In this document: positions 1,051 to 10,998 of the stretch, one piece after another | How the letters are laid out: each line of letters begins with the position of its first letter | How positions within the stretch are numbered: the stretch's first letter is position 1 | From: Euprymna scolopes | Lineage: Eukaryota | Strand: one strand, 5' to 3' | Length of the DNA: 64,000 bases | Assembly (NCBI GenBank): GCA_053919585.1 | Contig: CM132817.1 | Translations under genes and position numbers: made by a program | Notes under the pieces: model-generated | The model's database searches: none | What the model was told of the DNA's origin: nothing | The model's input: the letters and a program-made list of their open reading frames with translations, nothing else

Positions 1051-1577
1051 AGAAGCAATTCACTATCGATTATTATATTTGTATCAGAAGTCTTTGTCTA
1101 ACGCAAAGCAACACAACGTTTTGGTTTAAACGTCAAGCAGAGGTTCGCTAGTCACAAGTTGACTCGAGTAGAGTTCGTTGTTCACAACACGAAATATACG
1201 CCGACGTTCTTTATTCGAATGTCTTAAACGCTTCTTCCACTCCTCCCAGTGACTCACCTTTTATGATGTTTCGGGTACACCTAATTTGCATATACCACAC
1301 GAGGCTGCTCGAGCTGTACGCGTGACCGGAGGCTTTAAAAGACAACAGCCGCCATATTAGGCCTCTTTTTTTCTTTTTCTGTCTTTCAGCCTGCTGCCGA
1401 GAGATTCTCACCCGTTTCTGAGGTAGCTCCTCTCTATGTCTATCGCAATATTAAATGCTAATATATAGCAAAGAAATCAAAATTATTGATAATACACATA
1501 TTTTAGTTCAGCGTCTCCCCTTCTTTCAAAATTTTTAATTTTATTAGTTTCGCTTACCTTTTCATTTCCCTCAACCA

Positions 1578-2765
1578 AATTCTATTTGAAACGTAAGAAA
1601 CGAAAATTATACTTCAAACGTAAGCATGTACAGATGAACGAAAATTCTATTTCAAACGTGAGCATGACTGTCAGATAAAAATTCTATTTCAGACGTGAAC
1701 ATGATAGTCAGACGAGAATTCTATTTCAAACATAAGAGTTATAGACAGACGAAAATAAACGTGACAGACTGACAAAATTCTATTTCAAATATAAGCGTGG
1801 CAGATAGGCGAAAATTCTGTTTCAAACGTAAGCGTTACAGACTGACGAAAATTCTTGGTCACACATAGGCGTGACAGAAAGACAAAATTTCTATTTCAAT
1901 CTTTAAAGATTGGTCAGTCATTTCATGTATAGCAATAACGTACTGAATTTTCAAGGCTTTACGACAATTTAAAATGCTTGTACAAAGAAAGTATGTAAAC
2001 TTATTGAAGCCACTATATACTATACATAATAAACATCGATTCTGTATGATAAAACTTGAAATGTAATATATGCTATATCTGTTAATTATTTGAGAGTTTG
2101 TAACCAAAATGTAATAGCTGTATAGTGCGATGAAAATGTGATTTGAAGCAAGATGTGCTGAAGCATATTCTAATTCAATCGCAAGTATTTTAATTACGAT
2201 GTAAGCAACGAAAATTCTATTTCAAACTTAATTGTGTCAACCGACGGAAAATTCTATTTCTAAAGCAAGTATAACAGACCGACGAAAATGTTATGTCAAA
2301 TGCTAGCGTAATAAACCGACCGAAATGCTATTTTAAAACATAAACTTTTAGAAACAGCGAAAATTTTATTTCCTTTACAAGCATGACAGATTAACGAAAA
2401 ATTATTAAAAACATATGCATGAGAGAACGACAAAAATTCTATTTCAAAAGTAAGCGTAACAGACAGACACAAATTCTATTTCAAACGACAGACTGATGAG
2501 TAGGATATTTCAAAAATAAGCATGACAGATCGACGTAAATTTTATTTCGAACTTGAGCGAGGCAAACGAACAAACATTCTATTTCCAACACAGGTATAAC
2601 TGATCAACGAAAATTTTATTTCAAATGTAGGCATGACAGACTTGCGAAAATTTTATTTCAAGGTAAGCGAGACAAACGAACTAAAACTTTACTTCAGGCA
2701 AAGATTCTACAAACCGACGAAAATTGTTATTCTAAACTAAGCTTGACAAACAGACGTAAATTAAT
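1578..2765 (+). repeat. Degenerate ~37-38 bp minisatellite array (unit ~GAAAATTCTATTTCAAACGTAAGCATGACAGACAGAC), interrupted at ~1910-2200
   Basis: AAAATTCTATTTCAAA core recurs about every 38 bp; 1910-2104 is a copy of 750-940. Confidence 0.85.
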
Positions 2766-3367
2766 TTACGATACGACCGGCGGGAATGGCTTTTATAAGT
2801 TTTCTTAATTAATTCGATTACTTCAGCTCAAAAATAAAGTCACCTACCTCAGATCGGAATCGTTTGTTTCAATGTTTCAAATAGAGCTCATTGTAAACGT
2901 TCGTCTTTGGAAGTTTCCAACGTTGATTGACGAACAGGATTATAGTTTTTTTATAAAGAGGCACTGGACGTGAATCACCTTCAATTCTTACCACGAAGCT
3001 CGCAAATTGAACGGTCCAATTAACAATTTATTGTTTTTTATATTAGTTTTAATTACGTACGTGTGAGCTGCATCGGAGATTAGACGGGTTGGCCGGAAGG
3101 GGTATCGTGTTGGTTGTGGGACAAAGGTTTGGAAGTGGATATGTCAAGGTTGTGAGAAAAGGAGGTGTAGAGGGCAAGGAAAAACCGAGCGATGAGGTGA
3201 AAGAGGGTGGAAAGTAGGAGGTGGATTGAGTGGTGACAGACGGAGTCTGAGAGGCAAATTGTGAGGAATGAAGAGATTGTAAGTTTTCAAGTAGAAAGAG
3301 AAAAATAAGCTGGAAAAAGAAATATAAAGAAAATGAAAGAGGCATAAAAGGATACAAGAATTAGAGA

Positions 3368-3418
<51 letters not shown>

Positions 3419-3712
3419 AAATAGTGTAAAGTTTTCTGCGTGTAAAAAAGAGGAAAAGAGGATGAAGAGGATATGATGCAATGAGAAAAAGAGAGAGTAA
3501 GAAAGGGTAAAGTTTTCTGTGTGCATTTCTAGCTAAAAGCCAACAACTACAAAACAAGCACCCACAATTACGTTTCTGATTTTTTAAGATGTGGATTGAC
3601 TATTCATATCATTTGGATTATTCAGACAGCTGCTCTCACCTTGAGTGTAAAATTCCCGAGATCGACATAACAATTCCGGTAGACAAAAAAAGATTACCAA
3701 GTTCGACAAGAA

Positions 3713-3757
3713 ACACCCGAAGAAGGTCGGAAGTTACATCGACCCAAACGTTGTGCA
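3713..3757 (+). ncRNA. Degenerate PLE-type hammerhead motif
   Basis: CCGAAGA-AGGTCG...CGACC-CAAAC-GTTGTG; same layout as 58513-58551 with core mutations. Confidence 0.45.
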
Positions 3758-4626
3758 AATAACACCCAATATGAGTACAGTAGTCCGAGGAATCCAAATA
3801 ATATAAAACATGCATAAAGTTGGTATTTTCTTCATTTGTATTTCCCAGGATGAATAAGATCTAAATTAAAAAGATATATATTCATTCTGTAGAGGGAGAA
3901 AAATACACCAATTTTCCGATTCGGATATCGATTCCAATACAATGAAAAGTTAAAGTTTTTCCAATTACTTATTCCGATTCCGATTAATCGTTCCAATACG
4001 ATTTGTCTAACCAGGATAAACTACGTTGTAACATTTGTATAGTACAGCTGTTAATGTTTGCTACATTAGTAGAACAACAAAGGCTACTTTGACAAGTGTG
4101 GAGCTACGTTAAATCTATTTCAACCTGTATTTTTCTGTTTAAAATAATAAACCTTGATTTGTCTAACAACAAAAAATACGTTGTACCATTTGTATAGTAT
4201 AATTGTTAATGTTAGCTATAGTAGTAAAAGAACCGGGGTTACTTTGACAAACGTGGAGCTTCTATGTTACATCTATCTAAATATACTCTTTCACCGTTCC
4301 GTTCTGTATTGTCAACATTGCAATCCGCGTTATTTAATTCATACTAAATTTACTTTTTTTTATATCTTAAAACGTAGATTCCAATAGAATTACCGATGCT
4401 GTTCTAAATTCGATACAGTTATCGATTCTAAATTGTTTAAATTTCTAAATATCGAGTTATAAATTTTTTTTCTTTTTAATTTGGTGATCGTATAGTGGCG
4501 AGATATATAGATTTAAGTTTCCTTAGTTGTTTAAAATCGATAACTATTTATCCTTTCATCATAAGTTACAGCAATTGAAAATTGAGTTTTCCTCTTATAA
4601 CACAGAGAGCGATGGATCCAGGGCGA

Positions 4627-5530
4627 ATCTATATATCTATAAAAGTAAGAATGTGTGTGCGTGAATACACATCTCAACCTATATATTACACGAATTCTTA
4701 GTCTAGAGACTTGAAATTTGGTATATAGGGTATTCAGACTTGTGGAGATTTTTTAAATCGGTTTTCACCCTAAAAAAGTGCCGCTAAGAGGTCAAAATTG
4801 AAAAATTATTACTTGGGAGAAGGGGTCATCGAATTTTAATCTGTTTGCTGTTTCACAAATACGCATGCGCAAATCGCTCTAATGTCAAATTGTTCATGTT
4901 AAGATGAAGTAGGTTTGAAAACACTTTTTCGAGAACGTGTCAAGCTGGCCTAATAGTTATGGTACTTGCCTCACTATCTTTAGGCTTTGGTTTCAATCTC
5001 AGCCTGCGTGTTTTTTTTTTTTTTTTTTTTTTTACTTACGCGAAGTGAACTGTTTAGGAAAACCCATAAACTCGCATGCACATGTCTCAATTTCTTTCGC
5101 CTTTTTTTTTTACTTCATTTTTTAAAAAAAGAAATTTAACTTTATGTTTAATACCTACGGTGTTTCGCCCGGCCCCTGCGGGGGCTGGGCATGAATATCA
5201 AAGTGTAGTATCTGTTCCGGAAGATACTGCAATCAAAGACCATATGTGGGGGAAACCCCACATATAAGACCATTGCTCTCGAGCAATCAGTTATTGGTCA
5301 CTGTAGAGGAAACCCTTCATATCAATTGTCACTATCCAGTACCTCTCGGGGGAACTGGTCCCCTCCCCTTCACTCTCCACGTTAAAAAACGGCCTTGTGC
5401 CTAATTTGCTAAGTGGGGAAGCAAATAAATAACGGTGTTTCCGTTTATAATAAATAAGAGTACTGCATGGATTAAAATATCATTTTCTGCGTATTTTACG
5501 AACAGGCAACATTAGGCGGCCTGCTAATAA
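4627..5530 (+). mobile_element. Non-autonomous Helitron-like element (related 5' part at ~38023-38390), carrying a tRNA-like segment and a nested structured insertion
   Basis: 5' TCTATATATCTATAAAAGT followed by TG-rich tract; degenerate 3' end CAGGCAACATTAGGCGGCCTGCTAA resembles the hairpin-CTAG ends elsewhere. Confidence 0.55.
5167..5431 (+). mobile_element. Structured SINE-like element, family S1, with 10-bp TSD
   Basis: ACGGTGTTTC at 5157-5166 and 5432-5441; ends GCAAATAAATA; homologous to 53660-54068 in reverse. Confidence 0.75.
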
Positions 5531-5733
5531 CACTATAAATTTCTAGTAACACTATAAATTGCTAGTAACACTATAAATTGCTAGTAACGCTATAAATTGC
5601 TAGTAACACTATAAATTGCTAGTAACACTATAAATTTCTAGTAACGCTATAAATTGCTAGTAACACTATAAATTGCTAGTAACGCTATAAATTGATAGTA
5701 ATACTATAAATTGCTAATAACTCTATAAATTGC
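5523..5733 (+). repeat. 19-bp tandem array (GCTAGTAACACTATAAATT) x ~11
   Basis: Near-perfect direct tandem units. Confidence 0.95.
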
Positions 5734-9737: not shown

Positions 9738-9782
9738 AAACTTTCGGTTTGTTGGCTTTCGTGGCTGTGCTGGCTGCAATGT

Positions 9783-9841
<59 letters not shown>

Positions 9842-9842
<1 letters not shown>

Positions 9843-10998
9843 CGGTTGACCTAGATATATATAAAGCTTTTGACAGGATATGGCACGATGGTCTTCTCAG
9901 GAAAATCAGGTCATATGGTATCACTGGAAGAATACATAACTTAATTAAATCCTTCTCAAGTAAGAGAAGAATCCAGGTTGTCGTCGAGGGTCGTATATCT
10001 GAACAATATAATATAAATGCGGGAGTGCCTCAGGGGTCAATCCTTGGAGCTTTATTATTCCTAATATTTATAAATGACCTCTCTGATAAAATTGTCTCTG
10101 AGATAGGTATATTTGCTGATGACACCACGTTCTATAACAGCCCCAAGGGGAAAACCAATGAACACATATCTAAGGAAATGGCAGAAACACTAGAGGAAGA
10201 CTTCCAATCTGTAGTAGAATGGGGACAAAAATGGATGATCACATTCAATGCCGCTAAGACTAAGCTTGTTTCCTTTAATAATTACAAGAAATCTTCTCTA
10301 ACACCAATAGCAATGGCTAAAAACAGATTATCAGAACATACTTCTTTTAAATTCCTCGGCCTACCGCTCAGAGGGAACAAGAGAGCATTGCCAATGCTGT
10401 TCCGAAGAAAGTGGGATCTCTCTACCGTGCTAGAAAGCTACTTACGCCTGAAAGTATCCTTTACCTCTATAAGGCCTCCATTTGCCTATATATGGAGTAC
10501 CGTTGTCACATTTGGGCTGGTGCATCTGCTACTAGTTACTCACTTTTGGACAAGGTTCAAAAGAGAGTCACTAACCTGATAGGTCCTAAACTGTCGTCTA
10601 AGCTTCAACCTCTGTTCCATCAACGAAATGTGGAATCCCTCTGCCGGTTCTACAAGTATTTTAACGGTGAATGCTCTTACGAACTACAAGCCCTTGTACC
10701 CCCTCGACGTAAATACCCCGACAAACTCGCCAAGAAGCTAAATCTTACCCCTTCACAGTAGAGATTCCTAGGTATGAGAAAATCTTCTACTCTGATAGTT
10801 TCTTTCCCATAACTGCTAGACATTGAAACTTCCATCCGGGATTCTGCTTTCCCAACTGTACTGACATGCAGAAGTTCAAGTGTAATGTGAACAAACATCT
10901 TGCTGCTTATCTCCCTTCATAATATCCCTGCAACTTATGTTCCCGATAGCATCCCCCTACTTCAAAGTGGAACTGTGCCTTGTTTGGGGTGAAAATTG

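What the first reader, a model, noticed from the sequence alone, without database searches (positions are those of the whole stretch)
5167..5431. Family S1: hairpin-chain retroposed element with no recognisable Pol III head
Seen: a 265-bp GC-rich unit between 10-bp direct repeats (ACGGTGTTTC) that folds as consecutive hairpins: GCCCGGCCCC-TGCG-GGGGCTGGGC, GTAGTATCT/AGATACTGC, ATATGTGGGG-GAAA-CCCCACATAT, TTGCT-CTCG-AGCAA and terminal ATTTGCT/AGCAAAT. The two units at 53660-54068 keep the hairpin order (GGCC-TTCG-GGCC, GTAGTATCTG/CAGATACTGC, GGGGAAACCC) while the middle sequence differs. I see no tRNA A/B boxes and no hammerhead core. Established: TSD plus a simple-repeat tail indicates target-primed reverse transcription. 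Inference: a mobile RNA whose structure is under selection, possibly a self-processing RNA or a LINE-UTR-derived parasite.
Basis: partly seen in the sequence, partly recalled or inferred. Interest (0 to 1): 0.75.

Follow-up and report, generated by a model that had tools for sequence, protein, structure and literature searches.

The report
U2-headed SINE copy with remodelled head
The 265-base "hairpin chain" is an old, decaying copy of a short parasitic retroposon whose front end was copied from the animal's own U2 spliceosomal RNA and whose tail mimics that of LINEs that home into U2 genes. It is a real mobile element, but I found no sign that it is a self-cutting RNA.

Summary
Window 5167-5431 is a 48% GC unit in 34% GC DNA, flanked by a perfect 10-bp duplication. 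It is built of consecutive hairpins and folds better than shuffles (z -4.98).

Bases 5197-5217 are identical to nt 26-46 of this genome's own U2 snRNA, and the sister unit at 54078-53847 (-) hits Rfam U2 (E 8e-5).

S1 belongs to a modular, very abundant family of U2-headed, LINE-dependent SINEs, like the crocodilian SINEU. In arrays the units stack head to tail, separated by the 8-bp U2 word ATCTGTTC. In the real U2 gene array I found two full-length LINEs (endonuclease, reverse transcriptase, zinc finger) inserted right after that word. Their 3' ends share S1's tail plan, including a 17-nt motif.

S1 is a small, older subfamily: about 250 heads and 5.4% divergence. Its U2 stem-loop I is replaced by a 10-bp GC hairpin, with an (A)GTTTC leader.

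The stems are kept between subfamilies by compensatory changes, but individual copies decay neutrally.

I found no ribozyme or tRNA signal. RNA data could not be obtained.

This scan has already noted the same system many times elsewhere in this genome. I found no paper on such elements in molluscs.

The parts
5157..5166 (+). Left copy of the 10-bp target-site duplication. Its last 5 bases, GTTTC (5162-5166), coincide with the family's 5' leader.
   Evidence: leader analysis
5167..5190 (+). Hairpin H1: a 10-bp GC stem with a TGCG loop. It occupies the place of U2 stem-loop I (remodelled head). Together with the linker bases that follow, it defines the S1 subfamily.
   Evidence: about 250 genome matches to a 30-nt word running from the 3' part of H1 into the linker
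5197..5217 (+). U2-derived segment, 21/21 identical to nt 26-46 of this genome's U2 snRNA, including the branch-point recognition GUAGUA. It ends at the LINE landing site (ATCTGTTC|).
   Evidence: real U2 confirmed by Rfam at 161 bits
5204..5231 (+). Hairpin H2: the U2 branch-site region paired with the 'anti-U2' first bases of the body. It spans the landing-site junction at 5217/5218.
   Evidence: array junctions
5242..5265 (+). Hairpin H3: a perfect 10-bp stem with a GAAA loop. This body module is shared with units U210, U245 and U208.
5272..5287 (+). Hairpin H4 (ATTGCT/AGCAAT). This module is present only in the S1 long and short subfamilies.
5294..5325 (+). Hairpin H5: an outer 5-bp stem plus an inner stem. 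The inner part is an 81% identical direct repeat of H3. Four pairs show changes on both sides relative to subfamily U194.
5336..5358 (+). Hairpin H6 (CCAG..CTGG stem). It is damaged in this copy. Subfamily consensuses differ by a compensatory C-G to T-A change.
5359..5377 (+). Pyrimidine-rich spacer.
5378..5431 (+). Conserved 3' module: the CACGTTAAAAAACG box; a 17-nt motif (5391-5407) identical to the 3' UTR of a U2-homing LINE, containing a small GGC/GCC hairpin; a terminal hairpin at 5404-5410/5420-5426; and a single-stranded AAATAAATA end that includes AATAAA at 5424-5429.
5432..5441 (+). Right copy of the target-site duplication.
53847..54078 (-). Sister unit of subfamily U194 with a less altered U2 head.
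   Evidence: Rfam U2 32.4 bits, E 8.2e-5
53659..53846 (-). Headless unit of subfamily U208, stacked directly behind the previous unit and joined through ATCTGTTC.
35385..35566 (-). Copy of a simpler U2-headed SINE family with a different terminal hairpin and a 15-bp TSD. The U2 part carries the intact landing site (ATCTGTTC|TTCAGATG). In two array loci examined, L041 and L044, arrays sit in copies of this family.

Best explanation
S1 is a dead, dispersed copy of a small and fairly old subfamily of a very abundant, modular family of non-coding retroposons in this large mollusc-like genome. The family is of the SINEU kind. Its head is copied from U2 snRNA and its tail imitates the 3' end of APE-type LINEs that home into U2 genes right after ...ATCTGTTC (U2 nt 46).

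Shown here:
- The U2 identity of the head.
- The LINEs sitting in real U2 genes at that base.
- The shared 3' architecture: a small GGC/GCC hairpin inside a fixed motif, a terminal hairpin, and an A-rich single-stranded end.
- The stacking of units separated by the 8-bp word.
- Variable TSDs at dispersed copies.

Inferred:
- The LINE reverse transcriptase picks the SINE RNA by the 3' module and copies it by target-primed reverse transcription.
- The U2 piece is the upstream flank of the landing site, carried along in the RNA. When the cDNA meets a U2-like target it joins by homology, which gives precise stacking. Elsewhere it yields a U2-headed dispersed copy such as S1.
- In S1 the U2 stem-loop I has been rebuilt into a 10-bp GC hairpin preceded by an (A)GUUUC leader, and the 5' junction often forms by microhomology to that leader. 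In the window the target itself ended in GTTTC.
- The hairpin chain is a property of the source genes. It is kept through subfamily turnover by compensatory changes, most likely for RNA stability and recognition by the LINE protein. It is not maintained in inserted copies.
- Transcription is probably by Pol II from outside the element or from its leader. This remains open.
For: Family size and age:
- 50 scored genomic copies at 79-100% identity, 4429 first-look candidates.
- Only 94 and 250 genome matches to two S1-head-specific 30-31-nt words.
- Mean 5.4% divergence from the S1 consensus, against 1.4-2.7% for array units.

U2 origin of the head:
- Real U2 array of 764-bp units on C9, Rfam 161 bits.
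- The S1 consensus is 20/20 identical to it; the window copy is 21/21.
- The sister unit hits Rfam U2 at E 8.2e-5.
- The genome holds heads reading GGGCATCAAGATCAAAG, which lie between the U2 sequence and the S1 sequence.

Stacking: units are joined as ...AAATAAATACC|ATCTGTTC|CGGCAG..., and two arrays examined (L041, L044) end in ATCTGTTC followed by the rest of a U2-headed host SINE.

LINEs:
- Two LINE insertions (about 6.9 and 7.2 kb by the spacing of the U2 genes), each with two ORFs, interrupt real U2 genes immediately after ATCTGTTC, with 22-bp and 46-bp U2 TSDs.
- ORF2 has Exo_endo_phos, RVT_1 and zf-RVT domains; ORF1 has zf-CCHC.
- At least 127 near-identical copies, many with an intact 1145-aa ORF2.
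- Motif GGCCTTGTGCCTAATTT is 17/17 identical in one LINE's 3' UTR, and a 10-nt core is present in the other.
- The same 3' fold plan appears in both LINEs and in the SINE units.

5' leader: 15 of the 18 copies that align from position 1 are preceded by TTTC. In L010, L012, L015, L021 and L022 the leader lies outside the TSD. In the window, L004 and L029 it overlaps the TSD.

Structure:
- z -4.98.
- H5 has 4 pairs changed on both sides, 0/500 shuffles reach this, and 86% of cells are paired against 29-48% when slid.
- H6 and H3 show compensatory differences between subfamily consensuses.
- Substitution rates are equal in paired (6.4%) and unpaired (6.7%) sites of inserted copies.

Precedent: SINEU with U1/U2 heads, mobilised by Keno-related Tx1 LINEs that carry the same heads, with transcription unresolved (PMC4494074). 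Keno targets U2 genes (PMC4640811).
Against: - No LINE with exactly S1's terminal hairpin was found. The two LINEs examined share only the motif and the architecture, so the true partner is not identified.
- The Tx1/Keno clade assignment rests on domain order and target site, not on a tree.
- Upstream of the 20-21 identical bases, the homology of the GC hairpin and leader to U2 stem-loop I is an alignment-level inference.
- The compensatory changes come from few lineages: essentially one lineage for H5 and one event for H6.
- No RNA data could be obtained, so the transcript ends, the polymerase and the absence of processing are untested.
- Dispersed S1 copies insert at varied sites, so site-specific LINEs must be assumed to act off-target, or another LINE may be involved.
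Confidence: 0.85

Rival explanations
1. S1 is a self-processing RNA element (retrozyme-like or with an HDV-like 5' ribozyme). On this view the hairpin chain is a catalytic fold that cuts unit-length RNAs out of longer transcripts.
For: The RNA is strongly structured. Relatives occur head to tail. The 5' ends of units are razor-sharp. Some LINEs are known to use 5' ribozymes (my own knowledge).
Against: No hammerhead, HDV, twister, pistol, hatchet or hairpin ribozyme match even at E <= 10. By hand, the first 24 nt form a plain hairpin with no room for the nested P2/P3 helices of an HDV fold (reasoning). Array junctions carry the 8-bp target word, and sharp starts are explained by homology-guided joining at the landing site. 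Rfam covers only described ribozymes, so a new class is not excluded.
Confidence: 0.03
2. S1 is an internally deleted LINE (5' UTR plus 3' UTR, a 'bipartite' non-autonomous LINE), and the U2 piece is only an incidental transduced flank.
For: The tail motif and architecture are shared with LINE 3' UTRs. The S1 leader CAGTTTC shares the 4 bases CAGT with the TCAGTGC start of both LINEs. Such derivatives are common (PMC5786205).
Against: BLAST of all six subfamily consensuses against both full LINEs finds only the 17-nt motif and nothing from the 5' UTRs. The body is made of duplicated hairpin modules. The U2 piece is present in many subfamilies and in thousands of copies, so it is not incidental. 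Only two LINE families could be examined.
Confidence: 0.07
3. S1 is a degenerate tRNA-derived SINE (for example of the cephalopod Ceph-SINE group) whose Pol III head has decayed beyond recognition.
For: tRNA-derived Ceph-SINEs are the SINEs described from squids and cuttlefish. S1 has no internal TTTT terminator.
Against: ARAGORN finds nothing. The consensus head of 27 copies is a plain GC hairpin plus U2 sequence, not a cloverleaf. The 23-nt Ceph/RTE motif quoted in PMC5786205 is absent from the window. The tail is not RTE-like.
Confidence: 0.02

Closest known systems
SINEU (SINEU-1/2/3 of crocodilians; Kojima 2015, PMC4494074)
   Same: Both are short non-coding retroposons with TSDs. Both have a head copied from U2 (or U1) snRNA and no Pol III internal promoter. 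In both, sequence has been added repeatedly at the 5' end, and in both there are Keno-related target-specific LINEs that carry the same snRNA head. The mode of transcription is unknown in both.
   Different: S1 comes from a different phylum and has no sequence relationship beyond U2 itself. Here the target of the LINEs is the U2 word itself, so elements carrying it become landing pads and stack into arrays. SINEU instead prefers a Mariner transposon. S1's U2 stem-loop I is rebuilt into a long GC hairpin. The body folds back on the U2 branch-site region. The body is a chain of hairpin modules.
Keno (Tx1-clade, APE-type LINEs specific for U2 snRNA genes; PMC4640811, PMC4494074)
   Same: The two LINEs found in the real U2 array have an APE endonuclease, RT and a C-terminal zinc finger, and they insert at one fixed base of U2.
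   Different: Clade membership was not tested by phylogeny. The family is very abundant and largely dispersed (at least 127 near-identical copies on many contigs), which is unlike a strictly U2-restricted element. I did not compare the insertion coordinate with published Keno sites.
R2/R1-type co-transcribed, homology-guided 5' joining of site-specific LINEs
   Same: Upstream target sequence carried on the RNA would let the cDNA anneal to the target and give precise 5' junctions. This is the best available account of the exact ATCTGTTC| junctions and of the GTTTC microhomologies.
   Different: This is an analogy from my own knowledge. Nothing about the joining step was tested, and no ribozyme was found.

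Membership tests
SINEU-type (snRNA-headed) SINE | Short, non-coding, multi-copy retroposon with target-site duplications | tested here: met
   10-bp TSD in the window. TSDs of about 7-30 bp at other copies. 50 scored copies and 4429 candidates. No ORF.
SINEU-type (snRNA-headed) SINE | 5' head derived from U1 or U2 snRNA | tested here: met
   21/21 identity to nt 26-46 of the genome's own U2. Sister unit hits Rfam U2 at E 8.2e-5. S1 itself does not reach Rfam U2 at E <= 10 because stem-loop I is remodelled.
SINEU-type (snRNA-headed) SINE | No Pol III type-2 (tRNA-like) internal promoter | tested here: met
   ARAGORN finds nothing, and there are no tRNA, 5S or 7SL Rfam hits. The polymerase itself was not tested.
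SINEU-type (snRNA-headed) SINE | Mobilised by Tx1-clade LINEs that share target preference, head or tail | tested here: inconclusive
   APE+RT+zf-RVT LINEs sit in real U2 genes at the same base where units stack, and they share the 17-nt tail motif and the fold plan. No RT tree was built and no LINE with the exact S1 tail was found.
Self-cleaving ribozyme element (retrozyme, or HDV-like 5' ribozyme) | Match to a catalytic core | tested here: not met
   No ribozyme family at E <= 10 in 5100-5500. In 53600-54130 there is only a noise-level RAGATH-13 hit (16 bits against a gathering score of 80).
Self-cleaving ribozyme element (retrozyme, or HDV-like 5' ribozyme) | Unit-length linear or circular RNAs; self-cleavage | not testable with these tools
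tRNA-derived SINE / Ceph-SINE | tRNA-like head with A and B boxes; Ceph central domain | tested here: not met
   ARAGORN finds nothing. The 23-nt Ceph/RTE motif from PMC5786205 is absent. Full Ceph-domain consensuses were not available.
Bipartite non-autonomous LINE (5' UTR + 3' UTR derivative) | Both ends alignable to an autonomous LINE | tested here: not met
   Only a 17-nt 3' motif is shared with the two LINEs examined. Other LINE families were not examined.

The most novel reading that the evidence does not exclude
The rebuilt S1 head (leader (C)AGUUUC plus a 10-bp GC hairpin in place of U2 stem-loop I) may not be mere decay. It may be a new 5' 'address' that has shifted this subfamily to a second landing pad. 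In 9 of the 30 best copies, S1 sits in one 1.2-kb repeat ('H'), and where the junction is intact it lies immediately after ...CAGTTTC. It is often stacked there with a short S1 variant and separated by the same 9-12-bp duplication. The downstream part of H itself begins with a related head. If this is true, a SINE can change its insertion target simply by changing the few bases at its own 5' end, with no change in the LINE enzyme. The leader's match to an initiator-like TCAGTT could also mark an internal Pol II start.
Probability: 0.15. Interest if true: 0.65.

Novelty: new variant of a known kind. Interest (0 to 1): 0.42.

Why it matters
snRNA-headed SINEs have been described only from crocodilians, and where their heads come from and how they are transcribed is unresolved. 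In this genome the whole chain can be read in one place: real U2 genes, LINEs inserted at one base of U2, SINEs carrying exactly the upstream flank of that base, and arrays built on it. That supports a simple origin for such heads, as the landing-site flank carried on the RNA. It also shows how a gene-specific LINE can multiply by spreading its own landing pad. S1 adds a derived stage in which the U2 hairpin has been replaced. This is useful for asking which parts of the head matter. For this window, the practical message is that the feature is a decaying repeat, not a gene or a ribozyme.

Tried and rejected
- A whole-genome Rfam U2 search failed twice.
- Two canonical U2 patterns found nothing, because this species' U2 reads GATCAAAGTG with an extra A. 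The corrected pattern found the array.
- I first thought the 5' end might be an HDV-like ribozyme. By hand, the first 24 nt are a simple hairpin without room for the nested helices, and Rfam gave nothing, so I dropped the idea.
- I looked for the partner LINE in several places, without success:
  - The window's three RT fragments are unrelated, and no 3' module lies next to them.
  - All 60 loci contain no LINE piece inside the arrays.
  - A LINE next to one S1 copy (L016/L061) turned out to be an unrelated poly(A) LINE.
- A possible pseudoknot in the tail (CUCCAC upstream pairing with GUGGGG in the terminal loop) is compatible with all subfamilies, but it varies only by wobble changes, so it stays unproven.
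- The idea that upstream TATA or CCAAT boxes of repeat H drive S1 was rejected. The TATA lies about 110 bp upstream, and dispersed copies do not carry the intervening sequence.

Full report
**Observation**

Window 5167-5431 is flanked by a perfect 10-nt direct repeat, ACGGTGTTTC, at 5157-5166 and 5432-5441. It is 48% GC in a 34% GC neighbourhood. As RNA, the + strand folds into a row of hairpins at -96.4 kcal/mol, with z -4.98 against dinucleotide shuffles. The reverse strand gives z -2.43. ARAGORN finds no tRNA-like gene. Rfam finds nothing at gathering level in the whole window, and no ribozyme family at E <= 10 in 5100-5500.

**It is a repeat family**

The genome (5.9 Gb, 925 contigs) holds many copies. 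Fifty were scored at 79-100% identity, out of 4429 first-look candidates. Many of them are 5'-truncated, as expected of LINE-mediated retroposition. Clustering 190 units from 60 loci gave six subfamilies that share modules: U208, U194, U210, U245, S1-long (the window copy) and S1-short. Two words specific for the S1 head occur only 94 and 250 times in the genome. S1 proper is therefore a small subfamily. The large candidate number reflects the shared body and tail. S1-long copies are on average 5.4% diverged from their consensus, against 1.4-2.7% for the array units. The sample is biased towards the best matches.

**The head is U2 snRNA**

Earlier notes of this scan suggested a U2 head for related repeats in this genome, and I tested that here. 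The sister unit at 54078-53847 (-) matches the Rfam U2 model over positions 1-47, with 32.4 bits and E 8.2e-5, below the gathering score.

I then located the real U2 genes. They form a 764-bp tandem array on contig C9, with full-length Rfam matches of 161 bits. This species' U2 reads GATCAAAGTG, with an extra A. That explains why canonical patterns failed, and it shows that the SINE heads come from this lineage's own gene.

The S1 consensus is 20/20 identical to U2, and the window copy is 21/21 (5197-5217 = U2 nt 26-46), including the branch-point recognition sequence. Upstream of this, where U2 has its 4-bp stem-loop I, S1 has a 10-bp GC hairpin. The flanking bases align loosely, GGGCATGAATCTCAAAG against GGCTAAGATCAAAG. 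The genome also contains heads reading GGGCATCAAGATCAAAG, which lie between the two. I could not fetch those copies to see their 5' ends.

**Arrays and the landing site**

In many loci, units of several subfamilies are stacked head to tail as ...AAATAAATACC|ATCTGTTC|CGGCAGATACTGC... Only the first unit carries U2 nt 1-38. The two arrays I read through (L041, L044) end with ATCTGTTC followed by the remainder of a simpler U2-headed SINE. A solitary copy of that simpler family, with a 15-bp TSD, lies in the window at 35566-35385 (-). The 8-bp U2 word therefore behaves as a target duplication regenerated at each insertion. The two units at 53659-54078 are such a stack.

**The LINEs**

The regular 764-bp spacing of the U2 array is broken by gaps of about 7.9-8.4 kb. 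I fetched two of them. Each holds a LINE inserted immediately after ATCTGTTC of a real U2 gene. The TSDs are 22 bp and 46 bp of U2, and both LINEs start with TCAGTGC. One has an ORF1 of 887 aa with a zinc knuckle and an ORF2 of 1145 aa with Exo_endo_phos, RVT_1 and zf-RVT domains. The two LINEs are 74% identical over 3.6 kb. The first is young and abundant: at least 127 copies match its ORF2 C-terminus at 96-100%, and many have the full 1145-aa frame open.

Its 3' UTR contains GGCCTTGTGCCTAATTT, 17/17 identical to S1 5391-5407. The other LINE has the 10-nt core. Folding shows the same plan in both LINEs and in the SINE tails: a small GGC/GCC hairpin within the motif, a terminal hairpin of variable sequence, and a single-stranded A-rich end. 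This fits Keno-like, U2-specific, APE-type LINEs as the mobilising enzymes (literature). I built no RT tree, and I did not find a LINE with S1's exact terminal hairpin, so the partner is inferred and not identified.

**The 5' end of S1**

Of the 18 copies that align from S1 position 1, 15 are preceded by TTTC.
- In L010, L012, L015, L021 and L022 the TSD ends before (A)GTTTC, so the leader belongs to the element.
- In the window, L004 and L029 the target itself supplied GTTT(C).

I read this as microhomology-mediated joining of the cDNA end. The window's TSD is thus somewhere between 5 and 10 bp. The 3' end of the family is AAATAAATA(A)CC, as in the arrays.

Nine of the 30 best copies lie in a 1.2-kb repeat that I call H, in most of them right after ...CAGTTTC. 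They are often stacked with S1-short and separated by the same 9-12-bp duplication. The part of H downstream of the site begins CAGTTTCGGCTGGG..., which resembles the S1 head. This could be a second landing pad chosen through the element's own 5' bases. I rate that at about 15%, because I could not sample copies without bias or show that the insertions are independent.

**Is the structure selected?**

Between subfamily consensuses the stems are kept while the sequence changes.
- The outer stem of H5 is TTGGT/ACCAA in four subfamilies and CCAGT/ACTGG in U194. That is three adjacent double changes, and an inner T.T mismatch also becomes G-C. On a 12-sequence alignment, 4 pairs have changes on both sides (0 of 500 shuffles reach this), and 86% of cells pair, against 29-48% when the partner is slid.
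- H6 differs by C-G against T-A at one position and has loops of 4-16 nt.
- H3 keeps an 8-bp core, with different outer pairs in U208.
- The inner part of H5 is an 81% identical direct repeat of H3, so the body grew by duplication of a hairpin module.

These are few independent events, so the support is moderate. Within S1-long, substitutions are as frequent in paired sites (6.4%) as in unpaired sites (6.7%). Inserted copies therefore decay neutrally. Any constraint acts on the source genes, as is usual for SINEs.

**What it is not**

- Not a ribozyme by any described family. The array junctions argue for serial insertion rather than rolling-circle products.
- Not a tRNA-derived or Ceph-type SINE (literature).
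- Not a deletion derivative of the two LINEs examined.

**Transcription**

There is no TTTT inside S1, and there is an AATAAA at 5424-5429. U2 genes use upstream Pol II promoters, and the same open question exists for SINEU. I could obtain no RNA data. Pol II transcription from an outside promoter, or from the initiator-like leader, is an inference.

**Novelty**

In the searchable literature, snRNA-headed SINEs are reported from crocodilians only. I found no report from molluscs. Within this scan the same system has already been noted many times on other pieces of this genome. Those notes gave me the U2 lead, which I then verified independently. What this finding adds is a derived subfamily with a rebuilt head, a defined leader, and a possible second landing site.

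**Limits**

The organism was not identified here. Size, contig number and composition fit a cephalopod, as earlier notes also suggest. 

Noticed in passing
G000 contig C9, about 168.867-168.969 Mb (loci L066-L073): The real U2 snRNA gene array has 764-bp units on the minus strand. At least four gaps of about 7.9-8.4 kb break the spacing. The two gaps I fetched hold LINE insertions of two related families (74% identical), both inserted right after ATCTGTTC of U2.
   Followed up: partly
L072 (ORF2 at 1164-4598, minus strand) and the coordinates listed: The U2-array LINE is very young. Fifteen listed copies have a 100% identical ORF2 C-terminus and at least 127 are 96% identical or better, many with the full 1145-aa frame open. 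They are spread over many contigs, so it is not confined to U2 genes.
   Followed up: partly
L009:1098-2573, L023:1170-2600, L018:1766-2560 and similar stretches in L016, L017, L024, L025, L026 and L030: A repeat of about 1.2 kb ('H') hosts S1 stacks at one site. It has no Rfam match. It contains an internal run of repeats of about 38 bp, and its downstream part starts with a head resembling that of S1. Its nature is unknown.
   Followed up: partly
L041:1275-2900 and L044:1270-2880: Two loci with different flanks carry arrays with nearly the same order of unit types inside a U2-headed host SINE, and the L044 composite is flanked by a TSD of about 16 bp. Whole arrays may be retroposed as single units.
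   Followed up: no
window 5522-5733: A 19-bp minisatellite (11 copies, 91% matches) lies about 90 bp downstream of S1.
   Followed up: no
window 4940-5035: A short stretch with tRNA-like words is followed by a run of about 30 T just upstream of S1. It may be the end of another retroposon on the opposite strand. ARAGORN finds no tRNA.
   Followed up: no
window 9749-10579 (+), 35622-36140 (-), 45615-46586 (+): Three reverse-transcriptase ORF fragments of decayed LINEs. The one at 35622-36140 lies beside the U2-headed SINE at 35385-35566 (-). None has the S1-type 3' module next to it.
   Followed up: partly
window 53645-53658 and 54100-54113 (minus-strand reading): The two-unit stack at 53659-54078 seems to be flanked by a duplication (ATCTTATGTTTTTG...). 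About 22 extra bases lie in the upstream copy between two parts of the duplication, so the exact TSD is unclear.
   Followed up: no
window 5372-5427 and alignment A1, columns 233-278: RNAalifold pairs CUCCAC upstream of the tail motif with GUGGGG in the loop of the terminal hairpin. Together with that hairpin this would make a pseudoknot. It is kept in all subfamilies, but only through wobble changes.
   Followed up: partly
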